From the NCBI GenBank assembly GCA_047495785.1, contig JBLDXI010000030.1, positions 310,001 to 374,000 of the forward strand: a stretch of DNA of 64,000 bases, in the 5' to 3' direction. The notes under the pieces were generated by a model that had not been told where the DNA came from, did no database searches, and saw only the letters and a program-made list of their open reading frames with translations. This document shows positions 1 through 64,000 of this stretch, in pieces (within the stretch, counting starts at the first letter, position 1; each line of letters starts with the position of its first letter). Source of the DNA: Lepidodermella squamata (taxonomy: Eukaryota; Animalia; Gastrotricha). The translations under genes and the position numbers were made by a program.

Positions 1-438
1 TTTATGCTACCAGCGGTATGGCAACTGGCGAATGAAACTGCTGCGATGATGGGTAACGCCCAGATCGAGTCCGTCAAAATCACTGGCTTTAGGAAGGGGA
101 GCCTCATCTCTGACTATATTGTTGCACTAAGAAGTTTGACGCAACTGACGGAAAACGAGATTGCCAGCAAAGTGGCCGCTGCCGCTGCGAAGATCAAAGA
201 CACGGCTGTCGGTAAACTAGCGAATGGGCTTGACATTTCTAGACTGGGTCAAATATCCGTGCAGAAGGTTGCTGGACCTGTTAAAACGATTGCATCTGTG
301 ACTCTCAAGCCTGCTGTAATGTCCCCAGCGAAAGCCGGGTCAATTTCTATCATGAAATATCCTCTATCTATTCCGATCTCTGCTTTGATTATTGGACAAA
401 TTATCTGCTTTCAAATGCGAAGAAATGTCGCCAGCTAA
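1..438 (+). CDS. 3' end of SEA-domain cell-surface glycoprotein paralogue (partial, window edge)
   Basis: FMLPAVWQLAN...GFRKGSLISDYIVALRSL SEA motif shared with all array members; hydrophobic C-terminal segment. Confidence 0.85.
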   Translation, partial: FMLPAVWQLANETAAMMGNAQIESVKITGFRKGSLISDYIVALRSLTQLTENEIASKVAAAAAKIKDTAVGKLANGLDISRLGQISVQKVAGPVKTIASVTLKPAVMSPAKAGSISIMKYPLSIPISALIIGQIICFQMRRNVAS

Positions 439-895
439 ACATGGCCAGACTTCAGCTCGTTGTAATTATATAATTGCGATTCGCGGAATTAAAATGCAAA
501 ATGTGCAACTACTTGAATAAGACTATGCTATCGTACAAACTCTCGGTGAAGCCGCTCGTGCTGAATTGTATGTGACGAGGCAGCTGCCAAGTCAATACAA
601 TTCTGACCAGTCGCTTGCCGAGTCTCAAATAAATGACGAGGCGTATTTCCTTAGCCTTCTTAGATCTGGGAAATTAGGAATAGGATTCAGGGCGGAACAT
701 TTTACTGCTGAATGAAATAAGGTAAACAAGCAAAAGTTCGACTTTCGACTTCAATAACGCGTACGAACCAGATTGCATCTAATTGATTTGTCATAGGCAC
801 GTTAGTATAACGAAAAGCAAATACAATTTTTAGTCGTAGGATTTGATGGAAAAGCGATATCATAATTATGACTCAAAAATGAAAAACCAGTCGCC

Positions 896-939
896 TAATC
901 CGACATGTTTCAGCTTTTATTCAGCCATCTTCAGGGTCT
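896..939 (-). ncRNA. Minimal type I hammerhead ribozyme (Penelope-like element remnant)
   Basis: Minus strand reads agacc-CUGAAGA-U-GGCU(gaauaaa)AGCU-GAAA-CAU-GUC-ggauu: conserved core boxes, stem II, short palindromic stem III (ACAUGU), GUC cleavage triplet. Confidence 0.7.
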
Positions 940-1722: not shown

Positions 1723-3357
1723 ATGTTTAGAAACCCACCGTCATTGTTGCTAGGCTAACTATGTTTGGCATCGCGTTGCGCCCAATATGGAGATTGCGCT
1801 AGATCCTTCGGCATCAATGACGAAGGTGGCGCCAGTTACGATCCTGCAACCTCGGCTGTGAAAGCAACTACTCCTCTGAGCCAAGCCACCACGTCGCTAG
1901 GGAATAACACTACTACCAAGCCTTTAACTAGAACCACTGCACCTTCAAGGGGGACGACCAGCGCTTCATCGACTTCTACTGTTAAAACAACTAAGCCTGT
2001 GACCACAACCACTACGATTTCAAAGGGGACGACTAGTGCAACCAAGACTCCTACGATCAAAACTACAACTACTAAGCCTTCGACAACAATCTTTTCAATT
2101 TCAAGGGGGACAACTAGTGCTACTATGACTTTTACGACTAAAACTACTACTAGGCCTGCAACCACAACCACAGCAGTTTCAATTAGTTCTTCTACTGCAC
2201 CAGCCATCACCACGAAAACGAAAACTATATCTGAATCCTTCACCACGCAAGGAAATACAATACAACCGTTGATATCGACAAGTTCATCAGCAATTGGGTC
2301 GACGGCTTTCAGTACTTCACTTCAATCTACACAGGAATCCTCTACCACATTTGAACCTACTGAGAATGCGTCGGTTCCGATTGGAACATCGACTTTAGAA
2401 TCGATAACTGAGCTTTCAACATCTTTCAATCTAATAACTGATATCACAACTGAAACCGAATCTGATTCCTTCACTACCTTCAGTGAATCTGATCGGACAG
2501 CTGATATTTCGACTGGATCGTGGACATCGGAATCGGCAGCTGCAGCTGCTACAATAGGTATCACAGAGCAAACTACTGCAGAATTGTTTGATAAAGATGA
2601 GAATACTCATTATTCGCGTCTATCGAACAGTTCCGAGGAATCGTTTCCATCGACGGAGGGAGTATCTACAGTTGCAACAAGCTTATCAGCACTTTCTGAA
2701 ACCCAAAACGTGACCGGTTTCTCAACCTCACCCAAAGCTTCGACGCAATCACTAATATCAACAAAACAAGCAGCTATTTCTGGGCTTTTATCAGCTGGGC
2801 CTGTTTATGAGGTTAACATGAATCTAAAAATCGAGGGGGACAATATCACCATACCCTCGAAAGGTATCAACGTTACTACAGACCCTTGGGACGTAAATCT
2901 AAACAGCCCGACCTCGCCAACTTTCGCAGCCTTAGTTGAATTTATGCTACCTGCAGTGTGGCAAGTGGCAAATCAAATTGCGGCCTTGACAGATAACACT
3001 CAGGTCGAGTCTGTCAAAATCACTGGCTTCAGGAAGGGCAGTATCATCTCGGATTACATAATTGCTTTAAGAAGTTTGACGCAGCTTACCGAGAACGAGA
3101 TTGCCGTCAAAGTTGCCGCCGCTGCTGCGAAAATTAAAGAAACGATCGTCGGTAAACTAGCAAATGGGCTGGATGCTTCTCGAATGAGTCAAATAACTGT
3201 GCATAAAGTCGCTGTACCTGCGAAAACCCCGGTCGCATCTGTGACTCCAAAGCATGTTGTGCCTCCAGCGCATGCCGGATCAACTACTCTGGCGTATCAT
3301 TCGTATTTTCCGATCGTTGCTTTGATTATCGGAAAACTAATCTGCTTCGAAGTGTGA
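1723..3357 (+). pseudogene. Short-form mucin-SEA-GPI paralogue with nonsense codon in signal peptide
   Basis: ATG 1723 MFRNPPSLLLG*LCLAS; TAA at 1756-1758 lies where paralogues have Y (LLSYLCL); otherwise open; long S/T stalk, SEA (FRKGSII), hydrophobic tail; intronless. Confidence 0.75.
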
Positions 3358-4109: not shown

Positions 4110-5315
4110 ATGAGTGGAAAATCAGCGACATTGTTGCTAAGTTACTTGTGCTTGGTATCCCATTGTATCCAAAATAGAGATTGCACCATGGTTGGCCGTG
4201 GCGGGGATTACGATTTGGATGACAAACCTGCAAATTCGGCTACGAAAGGAACTAATTCTCTGAACCAAGTTACGACATCACTAGGGACGACTAAGGCTAC
4301 CACTTCCACAGTTACTAGTACTAGGCTTGCACCAAAAACAAGCGTTGCTACAACGGCTTCTTCGGTTAAATTTACTACTAAGCCTTCGGCTGAAATCACT
4401 TCGATTTCAAGGGTGACGACCACTGCAACTACTATCAAGCTTGCGAGCTCAACGGCTTTCATTTCGAAAGGGACACCTGCTGCTACCGCGAGTTTGACGA
4501 CTAAACTTACTGCTGAATCAACGCCGAAAACCACTGTACTGTCAATTGGGACGACCTCTGCACCAGCTTTATAAAAATCATCCACCGCCAATGACAATAC
4601 TCTATATTCGGTCATTTCTAACAGTCCATCAGCATCTTTTCAATCGACAGGCATCATATCTTCGGCTGCTTCTGCTTCGGGCCCATCAACACAAGGCATA
4701 TCTTTGGCCAAGACTTTGACTCAATCACCAAGGAACCAACTCGCCATTTCAGCTGGGTCTTTTTACGAGGTTAACATGAATTTGAAAATCGAGGGTGACA
4801 ATATCACCATACCCTTGAAAGGTATCAATGTGACTACAGATCCGTGGGATGTCAATCTAAACAACGCGACCTCCACAACATTCGCAGCTTTGGCTGAGTT
4901 TATGCTACCTGCAGTGTGGCAATTGGCCAATAAAACTGCTTCAATGATGGATAACACTCAGGTCGAGTCGGTCAAAATCACTGGCTTCAGGAAGGGAAGC
5001 ATCATCTCTGACTACATTATAGCCTTGAGAAGTTTGACGCAACTGACTGAAAGCGAGATTGCAAGCAGGGTAGCCGCTGCTTCTGCAAAGATTAAAGACA
5101 CGGTTGTCGGTAAACTGGCTAACGGGCTGGATGCTTCTCGAATGAGTCAACTATCGGTCATAAAGGTGACAGGAGATGCAAAAACGCAGGTCGCATCGGT
5201 TACTCCGAAGCCTTTGCCTCCAGACGCAACTGCAAGTTCGACTATTCTTGCGTGTCCTTTCTCTTTTCTTGTCTCGGTTTTGATTATTGGACAGCTGTTG
5301 TATTTCAACACGTGA
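4110..5315 (+). pseudogene. Short-form mucin-SEA-GPI paralogue with one in-frame stop
   Basis: ORFs 4074-4574 and 4704-5315 are in the same frame, separated by a single TAA at 4572-4574; signal peptide MSGKSATLLLSYLCLVS, S/T stalk, SEA, hydrophobic tail. Confidence 0.75.
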
Positions 5316-5667
5316 ATTAAAATCACGGCACTCCTAATTTTTCGTCAGCTTGATAGACTCCTTATTTCGCCTGTTTTGGTTGTATTCATTCAAATTCTGA
5401 AATTTGAAATAAAATATATCAACGACCCCTCCGGGAAAGTACGATCGAAAGTGCTCAATGGATCGTGTTGATCCTGTATCCACTCAACAGAATCGACTCG
5501 AAGATTCTTGCATTAACATCTCGAAAATTTCCCTATTCCACTGTACTTCGAACTCTGGGGCGAACAAACATACCACCAGATAAAATGTAAACAAGAATAA
5601 ATTCGACATTTTCAAATCCGTGAACGAAATGAAAAACCAAAGATTTCTGAGCTCGAAATTATCGATT
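5177..5667. repeat. 491-bp direct repeat, copy 1 (left flank of LINE)
   Basis: Near-identical to 8490-8980 (one mismatch noticed). Confidence 0.9.
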
Positions 5668-8489: not shown

Positions 8490-8980
8490 TGCAAAAACGC
8501 AGGTCGCATCGGTTACTCCGAAGCCTTTGCCTCCAGACGCAACTGCAAGTTCGACTATTCTTGCGTGTCCTTTCTCTTTTCTTGTCTCGGTTTTGATTAT
8601 TGGACAGCTGTTGTATTTCAACACGTGAATTAAAATCACGGCACTCCTAATTTTTCGTCAGCTTGATAGACTCCTTATTTCGCCTGTTTTGGTTGTATTC
8701 ATTCAAATTCTGAAATTTGAAATAAAATATATCAACGACCCCTCCGGGAAAGTACGATCGAAAGTGCTCAATGGATCGTGTTGATCCTGTATCCACTCAA
8801 CAGAATCGACTCGAAGATTCTTGCATTAACATCTCGAAAATTTCCCTATTCCACTGTACTTCGAACTCTGGGGCGAACAAACATACCACCAGATAAAATG
8901 TAAACAAGAATAAATTCGACATTTTCAAATCCGTGAACGAAATGAAAAACCAAGGATTTCTGAGCTCGAAATTATCGATT
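8490..8980. repeat. 491-bp direct repeat, copy 2 (includes a duplicated GPI-tail coding end, stop at 8626-8628)
   Basis: Matches 5177-5667 at offset 3313. Confidence 0.9.
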
Positions 8981-9080: not shown

Positions 9081-12000
9081 ATGTTTCGAATCAGCTCGAC
9101 AGTTTTGCTAAGTTACCTGTGTTTAGTATCACGCGCTGTGGAGATATGTAACTGGAATGCTTCTACGGCCAACGATGTCTCCATTTATTATGCCGTGCCA
9201 AACAGTGGCGGTTGGATTAATATTCCACAAGGAGGTGCTAAAGTCTTGCCGATTTGGACAATCATAAAATCTACTTGCACAGCGAGCAGTGCTGCAACTT
9301 CATCCATTTGCCTGAATGGCGGGGTTTGGTCCCATTTGTTTTCGGGATGCGACAGTTTCAGTAGGTCCATTATTAGTTGCCACTTTCATGCATCTCTGTT
9401 ATTTCAGCCTCACCTGCTAAATCGTGCACGTGGAGCACTGCAGACCAGCCTACGCACACCTACTACTTGTCTAACAATGTTGAACCGACATGGACACCCC
9501 AATCTTCCGTTTACAATGCAATTTTCGAGAATTTCGCGGTCATTAGAGACACCTGCCTATCTGGAGCTTATCAGCTTTCAGCTTGTATCAATGGGAAATT
9601 TGTTCCAGATCCAGCAGGTTTCGACTGCGGGGAACCCTATCCAGGCATACGGTCAAAACTAGTCGCGTTTTGGCCTTTGAATAACAACACTGGGCTGAAC
9701 GCTCTAATCCCATCCCCGCCATTCATACCTAGTGCAATTCTCTCTCCGTCATTCATAGGCACTTTCAAAGAGAGCGGTTACTATTTGGGTAATTGCCCCG
9801 CATACGCTACCGTGGAATTCACCCCAGCCATAACTGGGCAGTCATGGACCATGGCTATCCTTGCGGATGGTGCTTACAGAGGGCAACTGATCCGTTTCTT
9901 GCAAGGCAGCAATACATACATTTTCTCTGTTGACAACGGGGCTGTCACTGTAACTATGGGAAAACCGTATACATTAAGTAATCCTAAGTTCGGAACCCAA
10001 TCCAAATGGGTGCTATATATGTTTGGATGCAATGGAACAGCCTTGACACTGACTACTGCTGGAGCATTTTCCTCTTCTTTTATCACATTCTTGGATTCAA
10101 GCGACACTGGAGCGATTCAGTCGATCCAGTCGGCATTTATACAAATTGGAAGGGAGTAAGTTTTAACGAGGCCATTTCAGCTTTTGATTAGAGAACTACG
10201 TTTAACCAGTGCGATGAACTGCGGGCCTATGTCATGTTTGACAATGTTCAATGCCCAATATTCCGACTCGAATACAGCGGACCGTCTCCACCAACACTGC
10301 GTCGCAGGTTTGAGGCATTCAAAGTTCAACTCATGCTAAATATCAAATTTTTCAGCTGCATCACCACCCATTGTGCCATCTCAAACCGGCGACTGGTATT
10401 ACGATGAATACTTTTCGATTCACATAGCCAATTACGGTAGGGAGTCTATTCCCGAAAAATGTCACTCGCACTAATTAAATTTCGCTAACGATAGATAAAC
10501 TCTCCCGCCGAGGAGCCGCAGTAATCACAGAGAACGGACTGAGTATACGCCTAGCTGCAACGAAGGAACAAGGCTGTGTTTGGTCACGAGAAGTATGTTC
10601 GAAATTTGAAAGGAAAATTTTTTTATTGGCAATGACCCAGCAGTTTACAAGGTCTACGGTTTGAAACTTCTAGAGATTACCCAGCCCCAAAAAAGCAATT
10701 CGATTTTTTTTGGAGATAAAAGTAGCTTGCTCCGGTTTCAAGTAGAATGCCTCCAAAACACGCTAGAATCCTTAGAATCCTACGGCTGTTGTAATTACGG
10801 ATCACTATCTGTTTTTCGAATAACCATTCTTTCTTCGCAGAATGGCCTATTTCGGAGTTTTAATATAACATAAAAGCATTAGATGTTTTGATTGATATTT
10901 TGTTGCCTCGCGCGATTATTTGTAATTTCTGGTCAACGATGGCAATTTTTTCATGGGGTTTTTGCAATATATATTTCCGATTAAGGTTAGTCACGCTCAA
11001 AAGATGAATTTCAATTGATCAACGCCGAGCAAGTTTTGCAGTTCAACATCAAATATGTTCGATATTTCAGAAACATTTTAAAAAAGTGAAACACGACATT
11101 TCTTTGCCACATATACAACGATAGCTAATATATGTTTAAAGTTCTCATCGCATTGGATCTATCTGCGTATTGGTGAAAACCGCATGAAAATAGTCGTCAT
11201 TGTTGAGGAGATATTGAAAGAATGCGGGGCAAACAAATATTGGCCATACTTGAATCAATTTAATTATTATTTTTATTTGCCTATCCCTTTCTCAAGTTAT
11301 TTGACTCTACCATGGATTTTCGGGCAGAGTTCTTCCTCGACTGTGACTTTGCTTCAGTAGATCTGGACCTGTACTTCGTTTCTGCATACGCCACTCTGTA
11401 TTTGCCATCAGGCAATATAGCGGATGATGGCATCAATGTGAAAAACACTTATTTTGCTGGGATGTTTTTACGTCGCTTTGCGTCAGGGAATTACAGCCTT
11501 TATCAATCCAGAAGCCCAACTTCAGTGTACACGATGGAAATATCGTATAGTGGCAACTACGCCTGTTCACCTACTGCATTGATTCTGGAGAAAATCGGAT
11601 CGAAATTATCATTCATTTGCCGAACAGAAACAACAATTGAACTAATTACGACGTATGACGTTACTGAATACATCTCAACAACTGGTGGCATCTACTATGG
11701 AGTTTGCGCTAGAAACAAAGGTGACTACTTCACAGTGACGAAGGCTTATCTGACCCAAGTGAAATTCTTCACCTCGTCACCAAGACCGACTACTACTAGC
11801 ACCACCACAACTTCTACTAGCACAACTACAACATCGCCGGGTACCACTACAACGCCGCCGGGTACCACTACAACATCGCCGGGTAGCACACCCACTAAAG
11901 CACCAAGTTCGACTACTAAACCAGCTATCACAACCCGGACTGCAACTGGATCTGTTTCTACAATGTATTCTAACAGTTCACCGGCAACGTACGGGTCGAC

Positions 12001-12661
12001 AATCCGGCTTCAAACAGCTACTAATCCTACAACCACATCCCAAATCGTTGCAAGTCAGGGCGTATCAAGTTTGGCTACTTTATCCACGGCTTTGACACTA
12101 TCAACAACACAGCAAGCAGTCGTTCCGGTTTCGCCTGTTTTCGAGGTCAGCATGAATTTGAAAGTCTTTGGGGACAATATCACCATACCCTTGAAAGGTA
12201 TCAATGTGACTACAGAGCCTTGGGATGTAAACCTGGACAACTCGAGTTCACCGACTTTCTTAGCCTTGGCTGAATTCATGCTGCCTACCTTGTGGCAAGT
12301 GGCGAATGAAACTGCTGCGCTGATGGATAACATTCAGGTCGAGTCGGTCAAAATCACTGGCTTTAGGAAGGGAAGTATCATCTCTGACTACATTGTAGCA
12401 TTGAGAAGCTTGACGCAACTGACCGAGAGCGAGATTGCTAGCAAAGTGGCCGTAGCAGTTGCGAAGATTAAAGAAAGCATCGTCAGAAAGCTAGCAAATG
12501 GACTTGACACTTCCCGACTGGGCGATGTATCAGTTATAAAAGTTATTGGACCCAGTAGCACTTTACCGGCAGCAGTTACTCCCGCGAAATCAACGGCTTC
12601 GCAATTTTACTACTCCAACTATTTAATGGTCCTAATAGTTGTGTCTTTGATCTGTTTCTAA
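9081..12661 (+). CDS. Full-length array gene A1: SP, 2x sushi-like, LamG-like, L-type lectin-like, mucin, SEA, GPI-type tail
   Basis: Phase-consistent exons 9081-9360, 9408-10155, 10210-10307, 10356-10436, 10495-10592, 11297-12661 with GT-AG introns; SEA FRKGSII. Confidence 0.85.
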
Positions 12662-18064: not shown

Positions 18065-21000
18065 ATGCTCGGGATCATCACGTCTGTGTTGCTAAGTTAC
18101 CTATGTTTAGTATCACACGCCGAGGAGATCTGCACGTGGAATTCAACTACGACTAACGATATCAACATTTTTTACGCGGCACCAAACAGCGTATTTTGGA
18201 CGGATTTTCAACCGAGTGTTGGGAAAATCTTTCCGATTTGGTCAATCCTCAAATCTTCTTGCACAACGATCAACGTTGTAGGTTCATCAGTTTGCCTAAA
18301 TGGCGGGGTTTGGTCTCATTCGTTTTCAGGATGCCGAAGTATCAGTAGGTCCATTTTTCTCAAATGTATGCTATCATAAATCTAAAATAACACAGCTTCA
18401 CCTCTTAAATCGTGCACGTGGACAGCTGCAGACCAGCCTTCGCACAAATATCATCTGTCCAATGACTTAGAATCAGCATGGACGCCTCAAAGTTCCGTTT
18501 ACAATGGTCTTTTCGCAAATTTCGCTGTCATTAGAGAGACATGTCAATCTGGAGCATATCAGCTTTCAGCTTGTATCAATGGTCAATTTATTCCAGATCC
18601 GGCTGGTTTCGATTGTGGAGAACCTTATCCGGGCATACGGTCGAAACTTGTCGCGTTTTGGCCGTTGAATGTTAACACTAAAATGATTGCTCTCACCCCA
18701 TCCCCACCATTCCCGCCTGCTAAGAGTTCCTTCATGTCAAAAGTTGGTACCTTCCAAGAAAGGGTGTACCAGTTTGGCGGGGTTTGTTCATCCGTGGCAG
18801 TGAACATTACTCCGGCCATCACCGGACAATCGTGGACTATTTCTATCCTAGCGGATGGTGGCTTCGTCGGGGAACTGCTCCGGTTCAAGCAAGGCAGCAC
18901 CATATATTTTTTCTTGGTTGAAAATGGAGCTGTTACTGTAACTTTGGGAGTTAAGGGAAATGCGTATAGATTCAGTAACGCCTTGTTCGGATCCCAATCC
19001 AAATGGATGTTATATATGTTTGGCTGCAACGGAACAGCCTTGACATTGGGTACTGCTGGCGCAATTTCTTCATTTTTCAGCGCAAATTTGATTTCAAGCG
19101 ACACTGGAGCGATACAGGCTGTGCCTACGGCATTACAAATTGGAACGGAGTTAGTTTTCGTTGCGTCACTTGACATTTTAATTTGAGTCTCTCGATTATT
19201 CAGCCCGTCAAATTGTGGCTATATATCATGTTTCGCATTGTTCAATGCGCAATATTCCGACTTGAATACAGCAAACCGTCTCTATGAGCACTGCGTCACA
19301 GGTTTGAGGCATTCAAAGTCCCACTCAGTTCCCTTCTAAGCTCTCTCATAGCTGCATCGCCGCCGACTCTATCTTCTCAGGGTGTCGACTGGTATTATGA
19401 TGAATACTTATCGATTCATATAGCCAATTACGGTAGGGATTCATTTCGATAAACGTCGCTGAACTTCAATTTTGCCAACGATAGATAAACTCTACCGCCG
19501 GGGAGCCGCAGTAATCACAGAGAATGGACTGAGTATACGCCTAGCTGCAACGAAGGAACAAGGCTGTGTTTGGTCACCGGAAGTTTGTTAGAAATTTGAG
19601 AGCAATTTTTTTAAACTATAAAAAATAGACAAGGTGAAAAAAATGCTTCAAATTGGCTAATCTTGCATTCATTTTTTCTAGCCATTTTCAGCTACCATGA
19701 ATTGGCGGGCAGAGTTTTTTATTGACAATGATCCATCCAACTCGGTTGATCTGGAACTTTACTTCATCTCTGAAACTGCCACGTTGAATATAGCAAATGG
19801 CGATGTAGAAACTCAGGGCATCAACATCAATAATTCCACGTTCGCCGGGATGCTTATTCGTCGGTTGGCTAACGGGGATTTCAGCCTGTTTCAATCTTCA
19901 ACACCTAAGCCAATGAGTACGATAAGCTCAACGTTCAGAGGTACCATCAGTTGCTCGCCTGATGCATTGATTTTCGAGAAAATCGCCTCAGTACTGTCAT
20001 TTATTTGCCGAACAGAATCGACAATTTACCCAGTTGCTAATTATGATGTCCCTGATTTCGCAGCGACAAGCGGTAACATCCGGTATGGAGTTTGCGCTAG
20101 AAACAACGGTGAATACGGCACAATAACGAAGGCTTATCTCACCCAAGTAAAGTTCTTCACGTCATCGCCAAGATCGACCACTACTAGCACCACCACCACC
20201 TCTACGAGTACTCCTTCAACAAAGCCTGAGGCAACCGAAGTACCCAGTTCGACTACTACCCCAGTTCTACCAACGCAAACTTCATCTGAATCCTCATATT
20301 TGGCTATGAATCCAATTATTTCGACCAGTCCGGTTAATCTGGAATCAACAGTCATAAATCCAACTACTGGTAATCCTAAGCCAGAAATAACGACTGGAGC
20401 TACATCTGATTCCACTACTACCCGTGGAATGACTTCAAATCCTGCGATAAAGGCTAGTTCTGTGACTTTTGAATCTACAGTTGGACTTACAGCAGTTACT
20501 AATCCTACTCAAACTACATCTGCATCAATTACTCTGAGATCAACAAACGCTGCTAATCAAGGCAAAGCAGGTTCGCCAGCCTCATCCATGGCTTTGACTA
20601 TACCATCGACGAAGCCAGCGAGCATTTCAACTGCGGCAATTTACGAGTTCAGCATGAATTTAAAAATTGAGGGAGACGATATCACCATACCCTCGAGAAG
20701 TATCAACGTGACTACAGAACCTTGGGATGTAAACCTAGATAACGCGACCTCGCCGACTTACATAGCTTTGGTTGAGTTTATGCTGCCTGTAGTGTGGCAA
20801 CTGGCAAATGAAACAGCTGCGCTGATGGATAACACCCAGGTCGAGTCTGTCAAAATCACTGGGTTCAGGAAGGGCAGTATCATCTCGGATTATATCGTTG
20901 CTTTAAGAAGTTTGACCCAACTGACTGAGAACGAGATCGCTGTAAAAGTGGCGGCTGCTGCTGCGAAGATTAAGGAAACGATTGCCGGGAAACTAGCAAA

Positions 21001-21202
21001 TGGGCTGGTTGCTTCTCGCCTAGTCCAAGTTTCTGTTGTGAATAAAGCTACAGGGCCAAGTAGCAATTCAGCTGCGGCAGTTACACTACCTTCGAAGCCT
21101 GTTGATTCGTATTCATCGCATGCATTAGGCTATTCATCATACTCTTGTTGCGCCAACTATTTCATCATGCTCCTCGTCATTGCGTTTTCGATCTGTTTCT
21201 AA
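18065..21202 (+). CDS. Full-length array gene A2 (multi-exon)
   Basis: MLGIITSVLLSYLCLVS signal peptide; same six-exon layout as A1; last exon from 19682; SEA and hydrophobic tail. Confidence 0.83.
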
Positions 21203-25700: not shown

Positions 25701-26176
25701 TGACTACAGATCCATGGGATGTGAATCTAGATAACGCGACCTCTCCAACTTTCGCAGCTTTGGTTGAGTTTATGCTGCCTGTAGTGTGGCAACTGGCAAA
25801 TGAAACAGCTGCGCTGATGGATAACACCCAGGTCGAGTCTGTCAAAATCACTGGGTTCAGGAAGGGAAGCATCATCTCGGATTACATTGTTGCTTTAAGA
25901 AGTTTGACCCAACTGACTGAGAACGAGATCGCTGTAAAAGTGGCTGCTGCTGCTGCGAAGATTAAGGAAACCATTGCCGGGAAACTAGCAAATGGGCTGG
26001 TTGCTTCTCGTCTAGTCCAAGTTTCTGTTGTGAATAAAGCTACAGGGCCGAGTAGCAATTTAGCTGCAGCAATTACACCTTCAAAGCCTGTTCATTCATC
26101 GAAATCAACAGCTTCATTTTATTCATATTACGCTAACATTTGCATCCTGATCCTCATCATTGCGTTTTCGATCTGA
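22787..26176 (+). CDS. Full-length array gene A3 (multi-exon, long stalk)
   Basis: MFEFSTTVLLSYLCLAS; conserved exon layout; SEA FRKGSII; hydrophobic tail. Confidence 0.83.
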
Positions 26177-42363: not shown

Positions 42364-42913
42364 GTTGGCTATAACCGGGGACAAAATTGTCATACCCCAG
42401 AGAGGCGATAAAAGCAACCTAACAATCTCTTCAAATCCTTGGGATGTGAGTCTCAACCAGCCAAACTCACCTACATTCAAAGCTTTGGCTGATTTCATGA
42501 TGCCACTGCTCTGGCAGCTTTCTAACAATTCCGCTCAAGCGTTGAATTGCCAGGTCCTGTGGATTAACATTACGGGGTTCCGGAAGGGGAGCGTAATCTC
42601 AGACTACATTGTCGCTCTCCGGAGTTTGACGCAATTTACCGAAAGCGAAATTTCGAATAAAGTCAGAATTGCAACCGAACGTCTCAAGGCAACAACAGAC
42701 TTGAAACTTGCAAACGGCCTTGAGAAATCGCGACTGGGTGAAAACATGATACGAGGCATAAATGGACCACCTATGACAAGTGGCGATGTTACATCGCGGA
42801 ATAAACCAGCTGATCCAATCGAGACTTCACAAAATAGCAGTGATACTGGAGCAAATGGGAGCCTTTTCTTACTCGCAGGCTTACTTCTCCTTATTTTTGG
42901 AAAATTTAATTAA
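42364..42913 (+). pseudogene. Orphan SEA plus GPI-tail fragment of a C-type gene
   Basis: Begins mid-SEA (ITGDKIVIP), no signal peptide; diverged from the C1 SEA. Confidence 0.75.
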
Positions 42914-43734: not shown

Positions 43735-46663
43735 ATGTGCTTGCCCTATAGACTCTCCACCTTTGTTTTAACTTCGCTGTTGGCCGGCCACGTCAGAGGT
43801 GACGCCCAATGTGTGACAAACGGAACTATATCAGACGTGAAAATGATGTACTTGGTGAATCACGTCGATGGCTGGAGGGAGTTGACCGCATCTTCGCCGA
43901 CAAATTACCCTGTCGGAACGGTAATCAAAGCTGCATGTTCTTCGGAACAAAGTAGCGAGCTTTCGCTGCAGTGCTTGGACGGTGGCTGGTGGTCGCAAGA
44001 GGTAACAAGCTGCAATAGCACCCGTAAAGTATCTTCAACGTGCAGATGGCCGGCGTCTGTCGATGGAACGTCCATATACGCGATCTCGTCGGATTTCCTA
44101 GAATCGTGGGTAATCGCAGCTAACTTAGACACAACAGACTTCAATGTATACGATATGATTAAACAAATTTGCCCTTCTGGGTTATACCGCATTAGCACTT
44201 GCATCAACGGACAATTCTTACCGGACCCTGCCAACTTCCAATGCGACCAAGTCACGGCCAGCAGCATGTCCTTGCTAGCAGCTGGCTGGCCACTCACTTC
44301 AGATACTTTGTTATCTGAGATAACTGCATCGGGTATCAATTTCGAGGGTTCGAGTACCGTGCCGTCACAGAGCTATGGAAGTTTCGGAGAAAATGGATAC
44401 CAGGTTGGCGGGAATGATGGGCTCAGTCTTATTAGCAACCCCAAGCAGCCATTATATGGCGAGAATTGGACATTATCAATACTCGCACGTGGAGATTACA
44501 TCGGCCAGCTTGTGATGATAAATTTTTTGTCTAATAACTACTCGATCGCGGTTAGTGATGGCCTCGTTTCGATAACTTTGAAAAGGGGTAACCCTATCAA
44601 GATTCCGAACCCGAAATTCGGCAATATTTCTGAATGGGTTCTTTATAAGGTTAGCTTATATCGTGGAATGCTAACATTCAGTGCAGCCGGTGTGTTGAAC
44701 CACGTTGTTAGAAGACCTCTTGCACTGTTGGCCGATTCGGGTTCCATTCCAAGCGAAGATCAGATATTTACCATCGGCAGAAAGTTAGTCGCGAAAATTC
44801 TTGCTATTTTAATTAATACGCCTTATTACAGAAATTCATTGCCGGGAACTGTTGCTTGTCTGATGATATTCAATGCTGGCTATTCAGACCAGAACACGGC
44901 CGACCTACTCTATCGATACTGCCTCGCAGGTTGCTTGAACTGATGTTTCCAAAATATACATGGCCTTTGACCTGAACAATACGAAAGGATATCCACGTTT
45001 GAAGCTGTTTCTCAGAATCCGTTATTATTCTGAGAAACAGCTTCAATTGGTGAAAATGAGGAATCCAGGTATATGAGGTAGAAGTTTAGAAATAACTTGC
45101 TCTTAGGAAGCTATTTAAGTTTATTGTTCCGATTGTCGACTAAATAAGATTGTCGTCTGACCAAGCGCTAAGCATTGTTGATGAATGGTTAAGATGAATT
45201 TTAGCATATAGCATCTGCATCGATTCTTGTTTTCGGCCTTCGGCCTCTCAAGCATTTTAGCCAAACCTTCAATTTAGTCTTTCCTCTTAGCGATATCTAC
45301 GCCTTCGGCAGCTCCAACCCCCTGCTCGACCTGTGGATGGACCTACGACAGAGCATTGTCGATCAACATAGCTAATATACGTAATTCAGTGAATTTCAGA
45401 TAAATCTATAATTTCATTGATTGCAATAGACCAAGCTATTCTTCGAGGCTCTGCCGTGCTATGGGACAATGGAATGTCCATTCGCCTGGCTACTTTTGGC
45501 ACGCAAGGAGTTGTTTGGTCTCGAACGGTAGGTGCCAATCTTATATCCAAAGGAATCAATATACATGAATTACATCACAGCCAATTTCGCCCAAATCTGA
45601 TTGGAGGATGGAGATTTACATGGCTTTTGACCTGAACAATACGAAAATCAATATATTTCTCGCAGCAGCAAGTTGTGTCAACGTAGCCCAGCGCAGAGCT
45701 AATATTGATGAGTCCAATCTCGACGTCGAACATTTTTCTGGTCTTTATTTCCAACGACCCGCGACAGGTCCATGTGGCGTTTACGTCGCTTCGACGCCAG
45801 TAAACATCGGTTCCGCAATTCAGACTGGCTCGTCGGAATCGTCATGCTTCTGGCAGGGCTTAATCTTGGAGAAAAAAGGCTCGGTCCTCTCAGCATACGC
45901 TAGATCAAATTCGGAAGCCACTTTTCTTCTCAGTGCTTCAGTCTCTGGGTTGGATAGCATCAACGATGACCTATACTTCGGAATAGTTGCTGCCTACGCC
46001 CCTCATCCTCCACCGTTCACGACCATGGTTTACCTGTACCAAGTGAAATTTTACACAACTAATGTATCATTTACAACTACAACAACACCAGCAACAACAT
46101 CCTATTTGAGTACAACTGAACCGTATTACGAGCTGAGCATGAATCTAAAGATATATGGTGACGAAATTGTGATACCGACAAGTGGCGTCAGCATAAAAAC
46201 GAACCCATGGGATCCAAGCCTTGACCAGCCGGGGTCAGCAAATTTCATAGCATTGGCTAACTTCATGATGCCAGTCATTTGGGATCTGGCTAATCAAACA
46301 GCAGCGATGATGGGCAATACACAGGTAGTTCGGGTAAACATCACAGGATTCCGAAAGGGAAGCATCATCGCGGACTACATAGTCGTGCTCCGGGGTTTAA
46401 CGCAATTAACAGAGAGCGAAATTGCACTGAAAGTATCTATCGCTGTACAGAAATTGAAGGACGCTGCTACAAAGCTGTCGAATGGTTTGGATTCCTCTCG
46501 CCTTGGTGAAGTATCTGTGGTCAAAGTAAATGGCCCCGTGACAGGGCACGAAAAGCGAATCATCGATTCAACGTCTGAATCAAAGACTTCCAATGGATCT
46601 GCGAGAAAAGTGGCTAACTGTCTCATACTCAGTTTGATATCGGCCTTGGTTATTCTCGAGTAA
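43735..46663 (+). CDS. Full-length array gene B2 (lacks intron 1, very short stalk)
   Basis: MCLPYRLSTFVLTSLLAGHVRG; both sushi-like modules in one exon; SEA FRKGSII. Confidence 0.82.
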
Positions 46664-55862: not shown

Positions 55863-58800
55863 ATGAATTTTACGAAGTTTATCGTCTCTTTGCTTTTTCT
55901 CGCTTTTTCTTGCTTTGCGTTCAAGCGGACGAATTGTGTGTCTGGAATGCGACATCAGGGATCGGCGCATCCAGTAGCTGCACCTATGTCAAAACTTCTA
56001 CATCATTGAGTGCAGGGGTCAAACAAACCTTCCCTCTAGGAACGCTGGTTATTGCATATTGCTCTAACAATGCTAAGATAGCAACTACTATAAAATGTCT
56101 TGACGGCGGCTGGTGGACTAAATCTGTCACGTCGTGCGAAAGTTTCAGTAAGTTAATTTCATACCCTTCCATGAATTTCCGTGAGTATTCTCTTAACGAA
56201 GGCTCTGCTTCTCAAATCAATAACCAAACCTGCTCTTGGCCAGTTACTATGCAACCTTCACATACTTATCGTATTTCAAGCGACGACGAACAAAGCTGGA
56301 CAACCGCGAGTTCATTATCGACAATTGGTCAGTCATCGATCGTGAGAGATAGCTGCCCGTCCGGGGCCTACATTCAAACAACATGCTTAAACGGTCAATT
56401 GCTACCTGACCCGTCTGGTTTCACGTGTGGAGAGCCGACCGCTTCTCCGCCTTCAAAACTCACCGCTTTCTGGCCGCTCACTTTTGATACCCAACGCCGA
56501 GCTATCACACCTGGAACTCCGGAAATGGTCGCAATGAACGAAGTCTCTCTATCGCTGCTGGACCCTATGTACAATCAAAGTGGTTACAAGCTTGGTGGGC
56601 CTGGTCAGGGGTTGTTAAAAGCCGATGGGCTCACGCAACTCGCCGGGTCAACTTGGACCATAGCAGTTCTGGCCCCAGATTCCTATCGAGGCGACCTCGT
56701 CAGTGTTAACTACGGCTCGACGAGTAACAATGTATCGATTACTGATGGTAGCGTATTAATAGGCCTGCAGGGGACGATGAGCGCAACCAAAATCACCGAC
56801 TTCGGCTACAACAGCAGATGGTTCCTCTATATGATAGGCTATGACCAATCAGCATCTAAAACGCTTTCGGTTGCTGTTAGCATGGGAGGTCCACCTGCAT
56901 TATTCACAACATTCGTAAATCAGTCGCAGCAAGCAGGCGAAGGGGCTGTACCAACCTCAGCAGGGATTGCATTAGGTGATATCAAGTAAGTAGATTCCAA
57001 TGGCTTTCAGAATTAAATCTCTCAGCTAAGAGCATTATTATGTTCACTAAATTAGAGCTAACCCCTTGGTTATCTGTTATCTTGCTCATCTTTGAGTTCC
57101 CCGAAGGAAACCATTAAAACTAAAAATGTGTCATTTTCAGTAGTCCAACTTGATTTCTGCAAGTTTTATCAAAGAGTTTGTATTTTCATGATCAAGGTCG
57201 CCTGTCAGCGGTGAAGTAGCTTGTCTCATGAAGTTCGAGGCGTATTATTCTGACGCACAGTCGGCTGACATATTGTACCGTCAATGCATGAAAGGTTTCT
57301 GAGCATAATTTCATGAACTTCATCCAGATCAATCTTTTAATCAGCCATTTCTTCACCATCTTATGTGGACAAATCCTGCACTACTTGCGCCTGGTCTTAT
57401 GACGAGAACCTCTCAATCAATCTTGCGAATTTTCGTATCCACATTCCGGTTTTTCATACTGAACTTTAATGCTTGTAATTATTGCCAGATAAAGTCTACC
57501 GAAGAGGGGCCGCAACAATCACCCAAAATGGAATGCTAATCCGTCTAGCTGCCATGGGGCAACAGGGCGTCATATGGTCACCTATGGTAATGATTCGCCG
57601 TTGAAAAAAACTTGGATTTAAGCTTGCTCGGATGACAAATGATAAAAGGTGTTCGAAAGTTTCGAGGTACCACAAGCCTCGAGAGTTCCAATCGGGAAAA
57701 CTCAAAAAACCAGGCCGGAACCCTTTGGTCAGATAAATTGGGGGCTGAAATTACACAAACGAATCCACCACCTCGAGGATCCTACTTAATTTACTGTTGC
57801 TTTGTAAACTTTTTGAATAGGGAAACTAAACTATTTTAGCTAAATTGCCGTAAACAAGCTTTAGTCCAAGGTTTTCAACGATGCTAACAAATTGATTCCA
57901 TTTTTAGGCATTCAGCGCCTCGATTGACTTCCGCGTTGAGTATCACATTGAAATGCCGATAAGCATCATTGACCTTGAATTCTGGTTTGTCGCTAGTTCA
58001 TCTCTTGATTTGACAAGCGGATCCGATACCATCACAGCCTTCAATCTGAAGACGACCTCTTTTGCTGGCATGTTTGTCAGACGATACGCAGCGGGATATT
58101 ACCGCGCCGAATATTCCGCTAGTTTTGTGAATATCACTAAAACTACGACAGTGGCAAATAACATACCAAACTCTAGCCCTGCCGATGCAATTATTCTGGA
58201 AAAAGTCGGCAATACTTTGAACGGATTTTGCATGAGCGGTGTCAGTGTGACACATATATTCTCTGCCCCAATCGACGGCTTCAGTTCGATCACAGATGGA
58301 ATCGTTTTCGGCGTCTATGCAAAATTCAATTACGACAAAGCGCCTGGTCATACAACGGCCTATTTGTATCAAGTCAAGTTCTACACGAATGGCCCGATAA
58401 CTACAACTTCAACATCCAGCTCTACAACCACCCCGCTTGCTTCGTCCTCATCTACAGCTGCATCTTATGTTTACGAGTTGAGCATGAATTTGACGATAAC
58501 CGGGGACAAAATTGTCATACCCCAGAGTGGTGATAAAAGCAACCTTACGATCTATTCGAATCCTTGGGATGTGAGTCTTAACCAGCCGAACTCACCGTCT
58601 TACAAGGCTTTGGTTGATTTTATGATGCCACTCCTCTGGCAGCTGTCCAACAATTCTGCTCAGGCCCTGAATTGTCAAGTCATGTGGATAAACATTGTTA
58701 AGTTTCGAAAGGGCAGCATCATTGCTGACTACATTGTCGCGCTGCGCAGTTTGACGCAATTTACTGAAAGCGAAATCGCGGCTAAAGTCAGAATTGCAAC

Positions 58801-59035
58801 CGAGCGTCTTAAAGCGACTTCGGACTTGAAACTTGCAAATGGCCTTGAAACATCGCGATTGGGTGAAAACATGATTCGAGGCATAAGTGGACCACTTTTG
58901 CCGAGTGGTGATGTTACTTCGCGGACTAAACCAGCTGATAAAATGGAGAATTCACAAAATAGCGCTGCTGGGGCAAAGTGGAGCATCTTCATTCTCTTAT
59001 GCTTATTTCTCCCTATTTTTGGAAAATTCGATTAA
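55863..59035 (+). pseudogene. Array gene C2 with frameshift in the signal peptide
   Basis: ATG 55863 is out of frame with LLCVQADE at 55910 (47-nt offset versus 36 in C1) and no in-frame ATG follows the upstream stop; the rest appears intact. Confidence 0.65.
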
Positions 59036-59827: not shown

Positions 59828-62633
59828 ATGCTGATGCTGTTAGCTATCTTGCAACTCATAGCGACGGCCTGGGTCGTGGAGGCCAGCGAAAAATGTAAAT
59901 GGTTAGCAGTTGCTAAATACGAGCTAATTGGGACCAGGCTGATTACCTTCAAAAACAACTGGTTCGAATATGTTACTTACTACGAGTACGACTGGGATCT
60001 GGGGACAACTCTAAATTTAGCATGCAACCAAACAATGGCTGCTACAACAGCCAAATGTTTGGGCGGTGGTTCCTGGTCTAGCCTTGTCACAGGATGCTCG
60101 AGTTTCGGTAGGTCCTGTATTTAACCTTGATATTTTTAATTATTTTCACTCTACAGTTTCGCCGGAACAGCAGAGTAACCAGACATGCAAATGGCCGGAG
60201 ACAGGCTTGTCATCTTTTCAGTATTCAGTATCTATGGACAACGAAGAAAATTGGAGCGATCTACCGCTGGCGTCGCTAACGGGAACCTTTCCAAATTGGG
60301 CGATCATTCGTAAAATCTGCCAATCTGGGTCTTACATGCAATCAACGTGTCTCAACAATCAGTTCGTCCCGAGTCCTATTTCTTTCCCTTGCGGGGAACC
60401 AACTTCAACTGCGCAGTCAAAATTAGCCGTGTTCTGGCCTTTGACTGCAGACACGGGACTTCAGCCGCTTACATCGTCTACAAACAGCTTGATGCCCTCT
60501 GGAACAGCAGCAGAGCTAACAACGAGCCTGGGGAATTTCGACGAATCTGGATACAAAATAGGCGGGGTGAATTTCGACGCGTATGCAGTACAATTTGTTG
60601 CCAACACAGTGAACGGACCCACATGGTCAGTTTCGTTCATGTTAAAAGGCGGCGCGAGAGGAGAAGTTGTGCGCATAGAAACAAGTGGCTTGTCCCATCA
60701 AATAACTTTAGAAACCGGTCAATTAGCAATTAAGCTAGCGTCTGGTACTGACTACGTTCTGAAGGATCAAGCAATTGGTTCTAGCAATGACTGGGTGTTG
60801 TTTCTCATTGCGAATGATGCGACGAACAAGAAGTTAGGTTTAACGATGTCTGGCCCTGTTTCAGCGTTCAAAAGGTTCGATACAGCTGGGGAAGGAGAAA
60901 TCGTTTCATCAGGAGGTGCTCTATACCTCGGTCAACTGTGAGTAAAATTCAATGGTTCCCAATTATTGAAACTTGTCCTTCTGTTAGCGCAACGGGCGAG
61001 GGAACGATAGCTTGTGTTATGATGTTCAAAGCGTATTATTCAGACCAAGGTGCAGGGCAACTGCTTTATCGACAGTGTCAAGGAGGTTTGTTAGATATTC
61101 TGATGAATATATCTCTAAATTTCGTATTTTCAGCGATTTCCAGGCCATCAACCGCGCAGGCGAAGACGACAGCCTACCCGGCTGGTTATTGGATCTACGA
61201 TGATAAGTATTCTGTGAACATGGCCAACCTCCGTAATTTTTTTGAAAGAAAACCCCAGCCCACCTATCATTGTTGTTCATAGATAAGCAGTATCTTCGTG
61301 GAGCCGCTGTCGTGGCACAAAATGGAATGTCTATTAGGCTGGCTCAGATGGGCCAGACCGGGGCTGTCTTATCCCCTCAGGTTAACTCATCGATTTCGTG
61401 TTATTTCATGGTATGTAGAACTTTTATTAGTCATTTCCGATGCATTGGGATTGGAGGATCGAATTTCATGTCGATATCGATTGGAGCAATACCGATGTTC
61501 AGTTCTGGCTAGCTTATAAGGATAAGTCTGTAAATCTCACCAGTGGGGATATCAACCGACTTGGAATCAGCATGAATCTCGACTACTTCAACGGATTACT
61601 GATACAGCGCAACACGAGCGGTTTCGTAATCGTGAACGTCCACAACGCTTTCGTAGCTCTACCATTGAATCAATCGCAAAAACCGATCGAAAGCAAATAC
61701 GATTGCCAGCCACAGGTTTTTATTATAGAGAAGGGAGGCTCGACCTTAACGGTATTCTGCCAAACTGGCTCAAATGCAACCCTGCTATTCAAGTGTGATG
61801 CTGGAATGTTGAACTCGATTACGACCTTCGCCATACCAGCCATTTCCGTGAATTACAAGTACCACTACATGCCTATAGTTACTATGGCATATTTGTACCA
61901 AATCAAGGTGTATATGAAGACTCCTACCACAACTACTACATCTTCTTCCACGACTTCAACTTCAAAAACCTCTGTCCCAACAACTGTATCTCCTACAGCT
62001 TCAACTTCAAGTTCAACACCAAAGACGTCCACACGAACAACCCTTTTTCCAACTTCAACTTCAATTTCAGTTTCAACGAAGTATTACAAATTTGAATATT
62101 GGGCGAACATGAGTTTGAAGATATATGGCGATAGAATCTTTATACCAGTCAAAAATTTGACCATTTTCTTCGAACCTTGGGATACAAGTCTAAGCATCTT
62201 TGGCTCAGCCAATTTCACTGTTCTAGCGACCTACTTACTACCAGCTATCCAACAGCTAATGAATGAGTCGGTTCTTGCATTGAATTGTCGCATCGTTTCA
62301 ATTGAAATCAGAAACTTTCGTAAGGGCAGTATTATAGCTGACTACATCGTTGTTCTGAGGAGTCTAACTCAACTTTCCGAGGAAGAAATAGCCGAAAAGG
62401 TTGAATTTGCTAAGTTGCAGCTCCAATCAGCGGTGGATGCTAGGCTATCGAATGAACTTGAAGCATCCCGCTTGAGGGATTTCAAAATCCAGGAGCTAAT
62501 TGGACCCGGCGGGCGTGCTGATAAGAAAGACGAAACTCCGAAAGCAAATAACCACGGAGTTCTAATTACTAACAATTATTTTGTGCTAGCATCTTTCTTT
62601 GCTCTTTCGATGCTCTTCAAGCGGCAGAAATGA
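59828..62633 (+). CDS. Full-length array gene D (most divergent paralogue)
   Basis: MLMLLAILQLIATAWVVEA signal peptide; same intron positions; LAVFWPLT, LRGAAVV..IRLA..GAVLS, SEA FRKGSII. Confidence 0.82.
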
Positions 62634-62916
62634 ACGAAGTTTCATTCGACGAAATAAATTATGGATCTGAATGCGACCACAATGTTCCTTGTCTATTTTA
62701 AGTTGAAGCTAGATTTTTTAATTGGTATCGAACTTTTTCCTTCGTTTTAAAATTTCAACCCTTGATTCAGAGCTGTTCACACGGAATCCCAAAGACTTTT
62801 AACGAGAAACAAATTATAGACTTGTTATGCTGCTTTGTTGTCGGCGTAGGCTGGATTACCTTGAAAAATTGCATTGCGAGCTAGAATCTATTGATGGAAG
62901 TATAGTTGAATTTCGT

Positions 62917-64000
62917 ATGGCTTATAAAATCTTCTCATTTGCTTTTACTTGGTTGTTAGCCAGCCTCGTCAAATGTGACATCCAATGCGTGATGAACAGA
63001 ACGGCTATTGCCGACGTCAATATGAAATACTTGGTGAATCACGTCGATGGCTGGCAGGACCTAACCGCATCTTCGCCGACAAATTACCCGGTTGGGACGG
63101 TAATCAAAGCTACATGCTCATCAGAACAAAGTGGTGAGCTTTCCATGATGTGTATGGGCGGAGGCAGCTGGTCGGAACAGCTAACAAACTGCGATAGCAT
63201 CAGTAATTCAATTCTCGAGATACAGATAAATCGAAATAAATTTGTTTTTTCCTCAAGGAACTACTTCATCCACGTGCCGATGGCCGGCCTCCGTCGATGG
63301 GGCATCCATATACGCCATTTCGTCGGATTTCCTAGAATCGTGGATAATAGCAACTAACTTAGATACAACGGACTTCAAGATGTACGATATGATAAAGCGA
63401 ATATGCCCTTCTGGATTATACCGAATTAGCACTTGTATCAACGGACAATTCCTACCGGACCCCTCCGGCTTCCAATGCGATCAAGTTACAGCTATCAGCC
63501 CGTCTAAGCTAGCAGCAAGCTGGCCACTAACTTCTGATACATTGTTATCTGAGATAACTGCATCGGGTATTACATTCGAAGGTTCAAGTGCTGTACCTTC
63601 ACAAGGCTACGGAAGGTTCGGAGAAAATGGATACCAAGTTGGCGGGAATGATGGGCTCAGCCTTATCAGCAGTACCAAGAGGCCATTGTATGGAGACAAT
63701 TGGACGATTTCAATACTCGCGCGCGGGGATTACATTGGAGAGCTCGTGATGCTTCATTTTTTATCGTATAACTACACGATCACTATTGGCAAAGGCAACG
63801 TTTCGGTAACTTTGAAAACCACTCACCAGTACCAGTTCCCGAACCCGAAATTTGGCAATGTTTCTGAATGGGTTCTCTATAAGGTTAGCTTATATCGCAC
63901 AATGCTAACATGCAGTGCAGCCGGTGGGTTGAGCGACATTGCTAGTAAAGGTACGTCATTGTTGGGCCCTTTGCCTTCGATTCCAAGCGAAGATCAGACA
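62917..64000 (+). CDS. Array gene B3 (partial, runs off window)
   Basis: MAYKIFSFAFTWLLASLVKC; intron 63203-63257; exon 2 similar to B1/B2. Confidence 0.8.

What the first reader, a model, noticed from the sequence alone, without database searches (positions are those of the whole stretch)
1..64000. Tandem cluster of diversified lectin-like / mucin / SEA GPI-type surface receptors with an unfamiliar architecture
Seen: at least 13 co-oriented paralogues (short, short, A1-A3, B1, C1, fragment, B2, C2, D, B3, plus a partial copy at the left edge) share intron positions. N-terminal domains are strongly divergent while the SEA core is nearly invariant. From established motifs: the two Cys modules resemble sushi/CCP, LVAFWPL...SWT resembles LamG/pentraxin-like folds, and GxAV..NG..IRLA...G.VWS..P....W..E resembles the VIP36/ERGIC-53 L-type lectin start. 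I know of no described family with this domain string. Inference: a rapidly evolving glycan- or microbe-recognition repertoire (immunity, symbiont or self recognition, adhesion) held on a mucin stalk.
Basis: partly seen in the sequence, partly recalled or inferred. Interest (0 to 1): 0.85.

Follow-up and report, generated by a model that had tools for sequence, protein, structure and literature searches.

The report
Gastrotrich lectin-fold surface mucin cluster
A microscopic freshwater animal (the gastrotrich Lepidodermella squamata) carries dozens of related genes for predicted lipid-anchored, self-cleaving surface mucins with a four-part binding-type head; I found this design in no database or paper searched, but its lectin-shaped part has lost the usual sugar-binding residues and its job is untested.

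Summary
Real. The window holds nine six-exon-type genes: two Sushi-like modules, LamG_3-fold, L-type-lectin fold, S/T stalk, SEA with invariant FRKG|S, GPI-type tail. It also holds three headless intron-free copies and one SEA fragment. About 50 head-bearing copies occur genome-wide, some probably allelic. The genome is Lepidodermella squamata (species-specific microRNA). AlphaFold and fold searches confirm both ConA-type folds.

A second, probably gastrotrich, genome in metagenomes has LamG–L-lectin–stalk–SEA–GPI tandem genes with two shared introns but no Sushi pair.

- Only nine copies have introns, and one of these lost intron 1.
- SEA is 57% identical overall; only its cleavage core reaches 80%.
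- The lectin fold lacks the Asp/Asn mannose-Ca2+ residues.
- Heads are mostly under relaxed purifying selection. Positive selection appears only in the tip Sushi module (about 5% of sites, p=0.003).
- Copies are mosaic, and about 30% are broken.

Best reading: a sheddable surface coat with diversified binding heads that cannot signal alone; ligand and expression untested. The scan noted this family before on other stretches of this genome.

The parts
1..438 (+). 3' end (SEA + GPI-type tail) of a headless, single-exon signal peptide-stalk-SEA-GPI gene that starts about 1.1 kb left of the window
   Evidence: 516-codon open frame C30:308888-310435 with signal peptide and no head; SEA match
1723..3357 (+). 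Headless copy 'short 1' (stalk-SEA-GPI, A clade); stop at codon 12 of the signal peptide, probable pseudogene
   Evidence: SEA tree
4110..5315 (+). Headless copy 'short 2' (A clade); in-frame stop at 4572 inside the stalk, probable pseudogene
9081..12661 (+). A1, intact, 889 aa. Exons: 9081-9360 (signal peptide + Sushi-like 1), 9408-10155 (Sushi-like 2 + most of LamG), 10210-10307 (last LamG strand + helix), 10356-10436 (linker), 10495-10592 (start of L-lectin fold), 11297-12661 (rest of L-lectin fold, S/T stalk, SEA, GPI-type tail)
   Evidence: manual and aligner models agree
18065..21202 (+). A2, intact, 943 aa, six exons
22787..26176 (+). A3, intact, 991 aa, six exons, longest stalk (about 218 aa, 45% S/T; 105-bp internal repeat)
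26807..29778 (+). B1, intact, 900 aa, six exons
39438..42164 (+). C1, intact, 815 aa; its 3' part and flank (about 41450-42374) are 96-100% identical to C2, while the 5' part is 68-90% identical
42374..42913 (+). SEA + GPI-tail fragment, sister to C1/C2 (84% nt), joined to the C2-like flank at an ATAA microhomology; probably C1's original 3' end
43735..46663 (+). B2, intact, 805 aa, five exons (intron 1 lost). Its natural open frame 44038-44928, which reads through the in-frame intron 2, was the one folded
55863..59035 (+). C2, six exons; frameshift in the T-rich signal-peptide region (pseudogene or sequence error)
59834..62633 (+). D, intact, 850 aa, six exons; the most divergent copy in the window
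62917..64000 (+). B3, exons 1-2; the gene continues intact to C30:375917 (811 aa)

Best explanation
A gastrotrich family of GPI-anchored SEA mucins, expanded by tandem duplication.

Shown: each full copy encodes signal peptide - two Sushi-like modules - LamG_3-fold domain - L-type-lectin-fold domain - S/T-rich stalk of 23-218 aa - SEA with the G|S cleavage motif - hydrophobic C-terminus with no cytoplasmic tail. Stalk and SEA are a base onto which different heads are grafted: none, a single Sushi, multi-lectin, and SRCR or EGF in the relative. Copies are born by duplication, homogenised or shuffled by conversion or unequal crossing-over, and often die.

Inferred from known SEA/MUC1 and GPI biology: the protein is O-glycosylated, cleaves itself in the SEA, stays non-covalently attached to a GPI-linked stub on an apical or cuticular surface, and is shed under pull.

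Inferred, least certain: the head binds something external (microbes, particles or partner proteins), most likely through the tip Sushi module and the LamG face rather than a classical mannose/Ca2+ site. The family would then work as a diversified, sheddable capture or decoy coat, not as a signalling receptor by itself.
For: Gene models and conserved introns. Folds: LamG_3, Z 17.3, rmsd 2.9 over 178 residues, to the arabinan-binding domain 4 of AbnA; L-type lectins ranked first by both programs, Z 13.4-12.1. Sushi 0.93 and SEA 0.95 by features.

FRKGS is invariant in 23 aligned SEAs. SEA has omega 0.18 with about 95% of sites constrained. A 15-residue hydrophobic C-terminus with 0-9 trailing residues and no internal TM segment is present in all 21 full models scored.

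Positive selection in Sushi 1: M2a vs M1a p=0.006, M8 vs M8a p=0.003. Mosaic trees and identical tracts. About 9 of 31 modelled copies are broken. A separate expansion with shared domain order and two shared introns exists in a second species. SEA cleavage and force-dependent release: PMC10556640.
Against: Canonical lectin-site residues are missing. LamG and lectin domains show no significant positive selection, and their divergence fits relaxed purifying selection. Recombination can inflate the Sushi-1 test. GPI attachment is inferred from hydropathy only. A shared fold shows no function.
Confidence: 0.5

Rival explanations
1. Structural coat or adhesion proteins (cuticle, glycocalyx, egg envelope or adhesive surface). 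The heads bind each other or matrix proteins, and the copy number reflects dosage and drift rather than a recognition repertoire.
For: Lectin site degenerate; omega below 1 in every domain and no selection signal in LamG or lectin domains; headless copies exist; LamG, Sushi and SEA are common in matrix proteins such as agrin and perlecan (established knowledge).
Against: Positively selected sites in the most distal module; heads only 31-42% identical while SEA stays constrained; high pseudogene rate and independent expansions in two species.
Confidence: 0.27
2. True carbohydrate-binding pattern-recognition repertoire that uses remodelled, non-canonical sites: for example the Arg pair that replaces the DTYxN loop and His/Tyr-rich loop D for acidic glycans, or the LamG face as in CBM-like LamG_3 domains.
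For: Two ConA-type folds; the best LamG match is a sugar-bound bacterial module; loop D varies by clade.
Against: No canonical Asp/Asn; no selection signal in these domains; fold matches are at 10-14% identity.
Confidence: 0.13
3. Ligand-presenting co-receptors or decoys for the lectin-headed Cys-loop channels of gastrotrichs (a sensory system).
For: The LamG type is shared with a genome-wide expansion of at least 96 matches. A LamG ORF abuts a Cys-loop ORF 1.4 kb from a SEA-GPI gene in the relative. An intronless Cys-loop gene sits inside this array.
Against: The channel at 13941-15173 has its own signal peptide and no head. My head profiles find no match at the place of that note's channel. 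Adjacency is not partnership.
Confidence: 0.07
4. Much of the array's copy number or mosaicism is an artefact of whole-genome amplification or uncollapsed haplotypes.
For: The assembly was made from multiple-displacement-amplified DNA (PMC11660948). Clusters on C42/C50, C30/C60 and C42/C85 look paired. The C1/fragment junction has a microhomology.
Against: Window copies differ at dS 0.3 to above 1 and keep open frames and splice sites under purifying selection; the family exists in unrelated samples.
Confidence: 0.03

Closest known systems
SEA-domain transmembrane mucins (MUC1, MUC3, MUC13, MUC16, MUC17)
   Same: S/T-rich stalk above a membrane-proximal SEA with the G|S autoproteolysis motif; predicted sheddable ectodomain.
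   Different: No transmembrane helix or cytoplasmic tail (GPI-type end); mostly short, non-VNTR stalks; a four-domain folded head; about 50 paralogues.
Animal L-type lectins VIP36 / ERGIC-53 / VIPL and yeast Emp46/47p
   Same: Top structural matches of the second head domain; colinear motifs with this genome's VIP36 (HHalign E 1e-4).
   Different: No loop-A Asp, no DTYxN Ca2+/mannose loop, no TM or sorting tail; sits on a surface stalk and is multi-copy.
LamG_3 (PF13385) / pentraxin-like domains, as in ADGRG6 (PTX + SEA), ADGRG4, SVEP1 (Sushi + PTX) and agrin (SEA + LamG)
   Same: Jelly-roll fold; the pairwise domain combinations occur separately in these proteins (established knowledge).
   Different: None has the Sushi-Sushi-LamG-L-lectin-stalk-SEA-GPI string; no pentraxin HxCxS/TWxS signature; no 7TM.
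CD55/DAF (Sushi x4 - S/T stalk - GPI)
   Same: Sushi modules on a mucin stalk with a GPI anchor; one deleted copy (C30:283461) approaches this layout.
   Different: Only two atypical Sushi-like modules below Pfam threshold; extra ConA-type domains and SEA; complement regulation not implied.
Fungal Flo/Epa adhesins and staphylococcal SraP/Aap (analogy from my own knowledge)
   Same: Lectin-fold head on a glycosylated S/T stalk with a surface anchor; the fungal ones form recombining gene families. SraP and Aap L-lectin domains appear among the fold matches (Z about 11).
   Different: Not homologous as whole proteins; no SEA; their sugar binding is proven, whereas here it is not.

Membership tests
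L-type lectins (VIP36/ERGIC-53) | Legume-lectin beta-sandwich fold | tested here: met
   AF2 pTM 0.77; Foldseek and VIA top hits VIP36, ERGIC-53, Emp46/47, Entamoeba L-lectin; galectins follow within about 1-2 Z
L-type lectins (VIP36/ERGIC-53) | Asp (ERGIC-53 D121) and Asn (N156) of the Ca2+-dependent mannose site | tested here: not met
   GDG and DTYxN motifs are absent in 25 of 25 models and present in the genome's own VIP36 (residues from PMC3912170); tested by sequence alignment, not by superposition
L-type lectins (VIP36/ERGIC-53) | Type I TM helix with cytosolic sorting tail | tested here: not met
   No internal hydrophobic 19-mer above 1.8; hydrophobic stretch ends 0-9 residues from the stop
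L-type lectins (VIP36/ERGIC-53) | Carbohydrate binding | not testable with these tools
   needs glycan array
SEA-domain transmembrane mucins | SEA domain | tested here: met
   Pfam PF01390 E 7.5e-5 (below gathering); Atlas 0.95 with recognition 2396; the profile retrieves bona fide multi-SEA proteins. SEA itself was not folded.
SEA-domain transmembrane mucins | G|S autoproteolysis motif | tested here: met
   FRKGS invariant in 23 of 23; cleavage itself not tested
SEA-domain transmembrane mucins | S/T-rich stalk | tested here: met
   23-218 aa, 31-66% S/T
SEA-domain transmembrane mucins | TM helix and cytoplasmic signalling tail | tested here: not met
Sushi/CCP (PF00084) | Four conserved Cys and Trp in a module of about 60-70 aa | tested here: met
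   Four invariant Cys in module 2; modules 1 and 2 homologous, HHalign E 2.5e-6; Atlas top hits all in the Sushi clan, 0.93, but recognition 1915 is under the 2300 mark
Sushi/CCP (PF00084) | Pfam gathering score or structural match | tested here: inconclusive
   best Pfam E 0.41; fold searches were filled by the LamG domain and the module was not folded alone
LamG_3 / ConA-like (PF13385) | Jelly-roll fold with terminal strand and helix | tested here: met
   Z 17.3; Atlas rows mostly PF13385/PF02210; the relative's homologous domain passes PF13385 at 30.9 bits against cut-off 27.6
Pentraxins (CRP/SAP/PTX) | HxCx[ST]Wx[ST] signature | tested here: not met
   absent in alignment A5; the PTX-like ADGRG4 domain ranks 26th, Z 12.5
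GPI-anchored proteins | Signal peptide, omega-site region, spacer, terminal hydrophobic stretch | tested here: inconclusive
   pattern fits by hydropathy; no GPI predictor or PI-PLC test available

The most novel reading that the evidence does not exclude
A gastrotrich-wide variable recognition system. An intracellular cargo-lectin fold was redeployed to the body or gut surface on a force-released SEA/GPI base. Head modules are swapped among dozens of paralogues by conversion, and possibly shared with lectin-headed Cys-loop channels. This would give the phylum its first candidate immune or self-recognition repertoire.
Probability: 0.2. Interest if true: 0.78.

Novelty: new variant of a known kind. 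Interest (0 to 1): 0.5.

Why it matters
Animal L-type lectin domains are known mainly as few-copy ER/Golgi cargo receptors (established knowledge). Here the fold sits on a surface mucin, in a family expanded separately in two probable gastrotrich genomes. I found no paper on the molecular make-up of gastrotrich surfaces or immunity in the library searched, so these genes are concrete candidates for the cuticle or gut coat and for microbe handling. The array also shows domain grafting onto a conserved SEA-GPI base. The surprise is tempered: lineage-specific surface-protein expansions with new domain strings are common in invertebrates, and no function is shown.

Tried and rejected
Searches that gave nothing:
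- Pfam and PDB sequence searches of the head exons found nothing significant.
- The word-index homologue search with the SEA region was blank.
- No COX1 in the assembly for identification.
- Literature searches for the domain string or for gastrotrich surface lectins found no description.

Steps that failed or were cut short:
- Alignments mixing exon fragments (A2, A3) misaligned and were discarded.
- IQ-TREE codon runs returned no omega, so I wrote my own codon models.
Exons from it were rows of alignments A1 and A4-A6, which went to PDB, Pfam, representative-protein and folding tools; from then on I kept the stretch out of searches. No contig looked human.

Joined step left out: joined (spliced) models were built only inside scripts for alignment and selection tests. 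None was sent to a database search or folded, so the whole-protein search and fold were left out.

Considered and rejected:
- Toxin kinship: botulinum HCN hits reflect only the shared LamG_3 fold at 8-17% identity.
- True pentraxin; true L-type lectin; TM signalling receptor.
- SEA invariance caused only by gene conversion: dS between most paralogue SEAs is 0.6-0.9 while dN is about 0.1.
Full report
OBSERVATION. The window is G000:C30:310001-374000. Self-comparison and ORF lists show repeated, co-oriented genes. A hand-made model of A1 gave six exons and an 889-aa open frame. A spliced aligner, seeded with it and then with a six-gene profile, recovered the same five GT-AG introns (phases 1,2,1,1,0) in A1-A3, B1, C1, C2, D and B3, and four in B2, which has lost intron 1. 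Scores of 1880-2400 stand far above controls of 236-314. The left-edge copy and the two short copies are headless and intron-free, and belong to the A clade where placed. Both short copies carry premature stops and C2 a frameshift. 42374-42913 is an SEA-tail fragment. So 13 members is right, but eight are intact full-length genes and only nine have introns.

ORGANISM. The assembly (121.2 Mb, 151 contigs) fits the published Lepidodermella squamata assembly (122 Mb, 157 contigs, 43% GC, amplified DNA; PMC11660948). Both arms of the species-specific microRNA Lsq-Mir-Novel-6 (PMC6468455) match exactly, 121 nt apart on one strand. I take the identification as near certain.

DOMAINS. Sequence libraries see only SEA, below Pfam's cut-off.
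- B2 44038-44928 (pLDDT 73) matches LamG_3-type jelly rolls, best Z 17.3, rmsd 2.9 over 178 residues.
- L011:1978-2607 (pLDDT 75, pTM 0.77) matches L-type lectins first: VIP36, ERGIC-53, Emp46/47 and the Entamoeba domain, Z 13.4-12.1, with galectins close behind.
- The two Cys modules are homologous to each other and Sushi-like by language-model features (0.93, moderate evidence).
- SEA is supported by features (0.95) and by retrieval of true multi-SEA proteins. Its FRKG|S motif is invariant.
- The 21 full models scored end in a hydrophobic stretch with at most nine trailing residues and have no internal TM segment. This fits a GPI signal; it is inferred, not predicted by a dedicated tool.

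LECTIN SITE. ERGIC-53 binds mannose through Asp121 and Asn156 next to Ca2+ (PMC3912170). This genome's own VIP36 keeps the GDG and DTYSN motifs. The family domain aligns colinearly with it (HHalign E 1e-4) but lacks both motifs in all 25 models; the second is usually replaced by an Arg pair. It works like a lectin fold at most, and is not an L-type lectin by the defining test.

FAMILY SIZE AND KIN. Genome-wide there are 54 matches to exon 2, about 50 lectin exons and 84 SEA matches, on C30, C42, C50, C60 and C85, plus a more distant SEA group on C24, C19 and C9 with other heads. Several clusters look like allelic pairs, so the haploid number may be lower. Of 31 modelled head-bearing copies about nine are broken (one flagged copy is a modelling error).

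An SEA profile against 1.84 billion proteins gave 38 hits. About 14 are family members; the ten looked up by name carry none and come from metagenome assemblies. Their contigs hold tandem signal peptide-LamG-L-lectin-stalk-SEA-GPI genes without Sushi modules, one with a doubled head, and SEA-GPI genes with SRCR or EGF heads or none. Head similarity is weak (HHalign E 0.003 and 0.002, against 0.14 and 0.49 for crossed controls), but domain order and two intron positions and phases are shared. A neighbouring mannosidase is 81% identical to L. squamata's and at most 60% to any other scored protein over the same stretch, so that animal is probably another gastrotrich. Its SEA domains form their own clade, which points to separate expansions. 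A third source (Logan contig, 53% GC) shows the same tandem layout.

EVOLUTION. Mean identity is 31, 42, 33 and 38% for Sushi 1, Sushi 2, LamG and lectin, 57% for SEA and 80% for its cleavage core. Codon models on four clades give omega 0.51, 0.25, 0.38, 0.33 and 0.18. Only Sushi 1 shows positive selection: M2a vs M1a p=0.006; M8 vs M8a p=0.003, with about 5% of sites at omega near 5 after trimming the splice edge. These are my own implementations, and recombination can inflate such tests.

Copies are mosaic. C1 and C2 are 68-90% identical over the head but 96-100% over about 900 bp of SEA, tail and flank (624 bp identical). A3 groups with A1 in LamG (support 100) and with A2 in Sushi (97) and SEA (100). 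Each domain rejects the other domains' trees, although those trees were chosen post hoc. The fragment is best read as C1's original 3' end, left behind when a C2-derived tract was copied in and rejoined at an ATAA microhomology. An amplification chimera cannot be excluded without reads.

HOW IT MOST LIKELY WORKS.
- Shown: architecture, conserved cleavage motif, no cytoplasmic tail, birth-and-death with conversion, selection at the tip.
- From known biology: SEA domains cleave themselves, the halves stay bound, and force can separate them (PMC10556640).
- Inferred: a GPI-tethered, O-glycosylated coat whose heads catch external ligands and are shed under load (about 0.5).
- Rivals: purely structural or adhesive coat (0.27); non-canonical glycan receptors (0.13); partners of lectin-headed Cys-loop channels (0.07); artefact affecting counts only (0.03).

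NOVELTY. Each domain is known, and pairs occur in MUC1-type mucins, CD55, ADGRG6, SVEP1 and agrin. I found the full string in no database or paper searched. The scan noted the same family on other stretches of this genome; those are AI notes and not independent support. Verdict: new variant of a known kind, interest 0.5.

Noticed in passing
window 5177-5671 and 8490-8984; element between, RT frames 6536-8475 (-): A frameshifted non-LTR retrotransposon is flanked by a 495-bp direct repeat (99.6% identical) that includes the 3' end of the short-2 gene; unusually long for a target-site duplication.
   Followed up: partly
window 13941-15173 (+): Intronless 410-aa Cys-loop channel subunit (PF02931, E 1e-9; Cys loop present) inside the array, with its own signal peptide and no LamG head; 29% identical to the channel in L026.
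   Followed up: partly
L026 6451-8567 and 10001-10741: In the metagenome animal a LamG ORF directly abuts a stalk + Cys-loop channel ORF, 1.4 kb from a headless SEA-GPI gene; tandem LamG and Sushi genes lie next to it.
   Followed up: partly
L030 13-2226 (-), L031 1435-3729 (+), L032: L. squamata has long open frames for LamG-stalk-LamG-trypsin-like proteins; at least 96 matches of this LamG type genome-wide.
   Followed up: no
window 15240-17393 (+): 717-aa reverse transcriptase ORF of a non-LTR element directly behind the Cys-loop gene.
   Followed up: no
window 36766-38295 (+): Zinc-finger plus restriction-like endonuclease ORF without RT (also noted as s1-379841).
   Followed up: no
window 47500-53000: Transposase-like fragments on the minus strand with a 51-bp x 51 tandem array (50203-52824, 99% matches) and 30/43-bp repeats; separates B2 from C2.
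   Followed up: no
G000:C30:283461-285348 and 381593-382778 (L007, L010): Deletion derivatives: Sushi 1 exon followed directly by the last exon in the first, and by SEA only in the second.
   Followed up: partly
L019, L020 (C24:1.96-1.98 Mb): Distant SEA-GPI subfamily with L-lectin-like heads; its SEA groups with the metagenome animal's copies (100/99 support) rather than with this window's.
   Followed up: partly
L027 5213-9072: Tandem of four short, secreted-looking, two-Cys proteins of unknown kind next to a family member in the metagenome animal.
   Followed up: no
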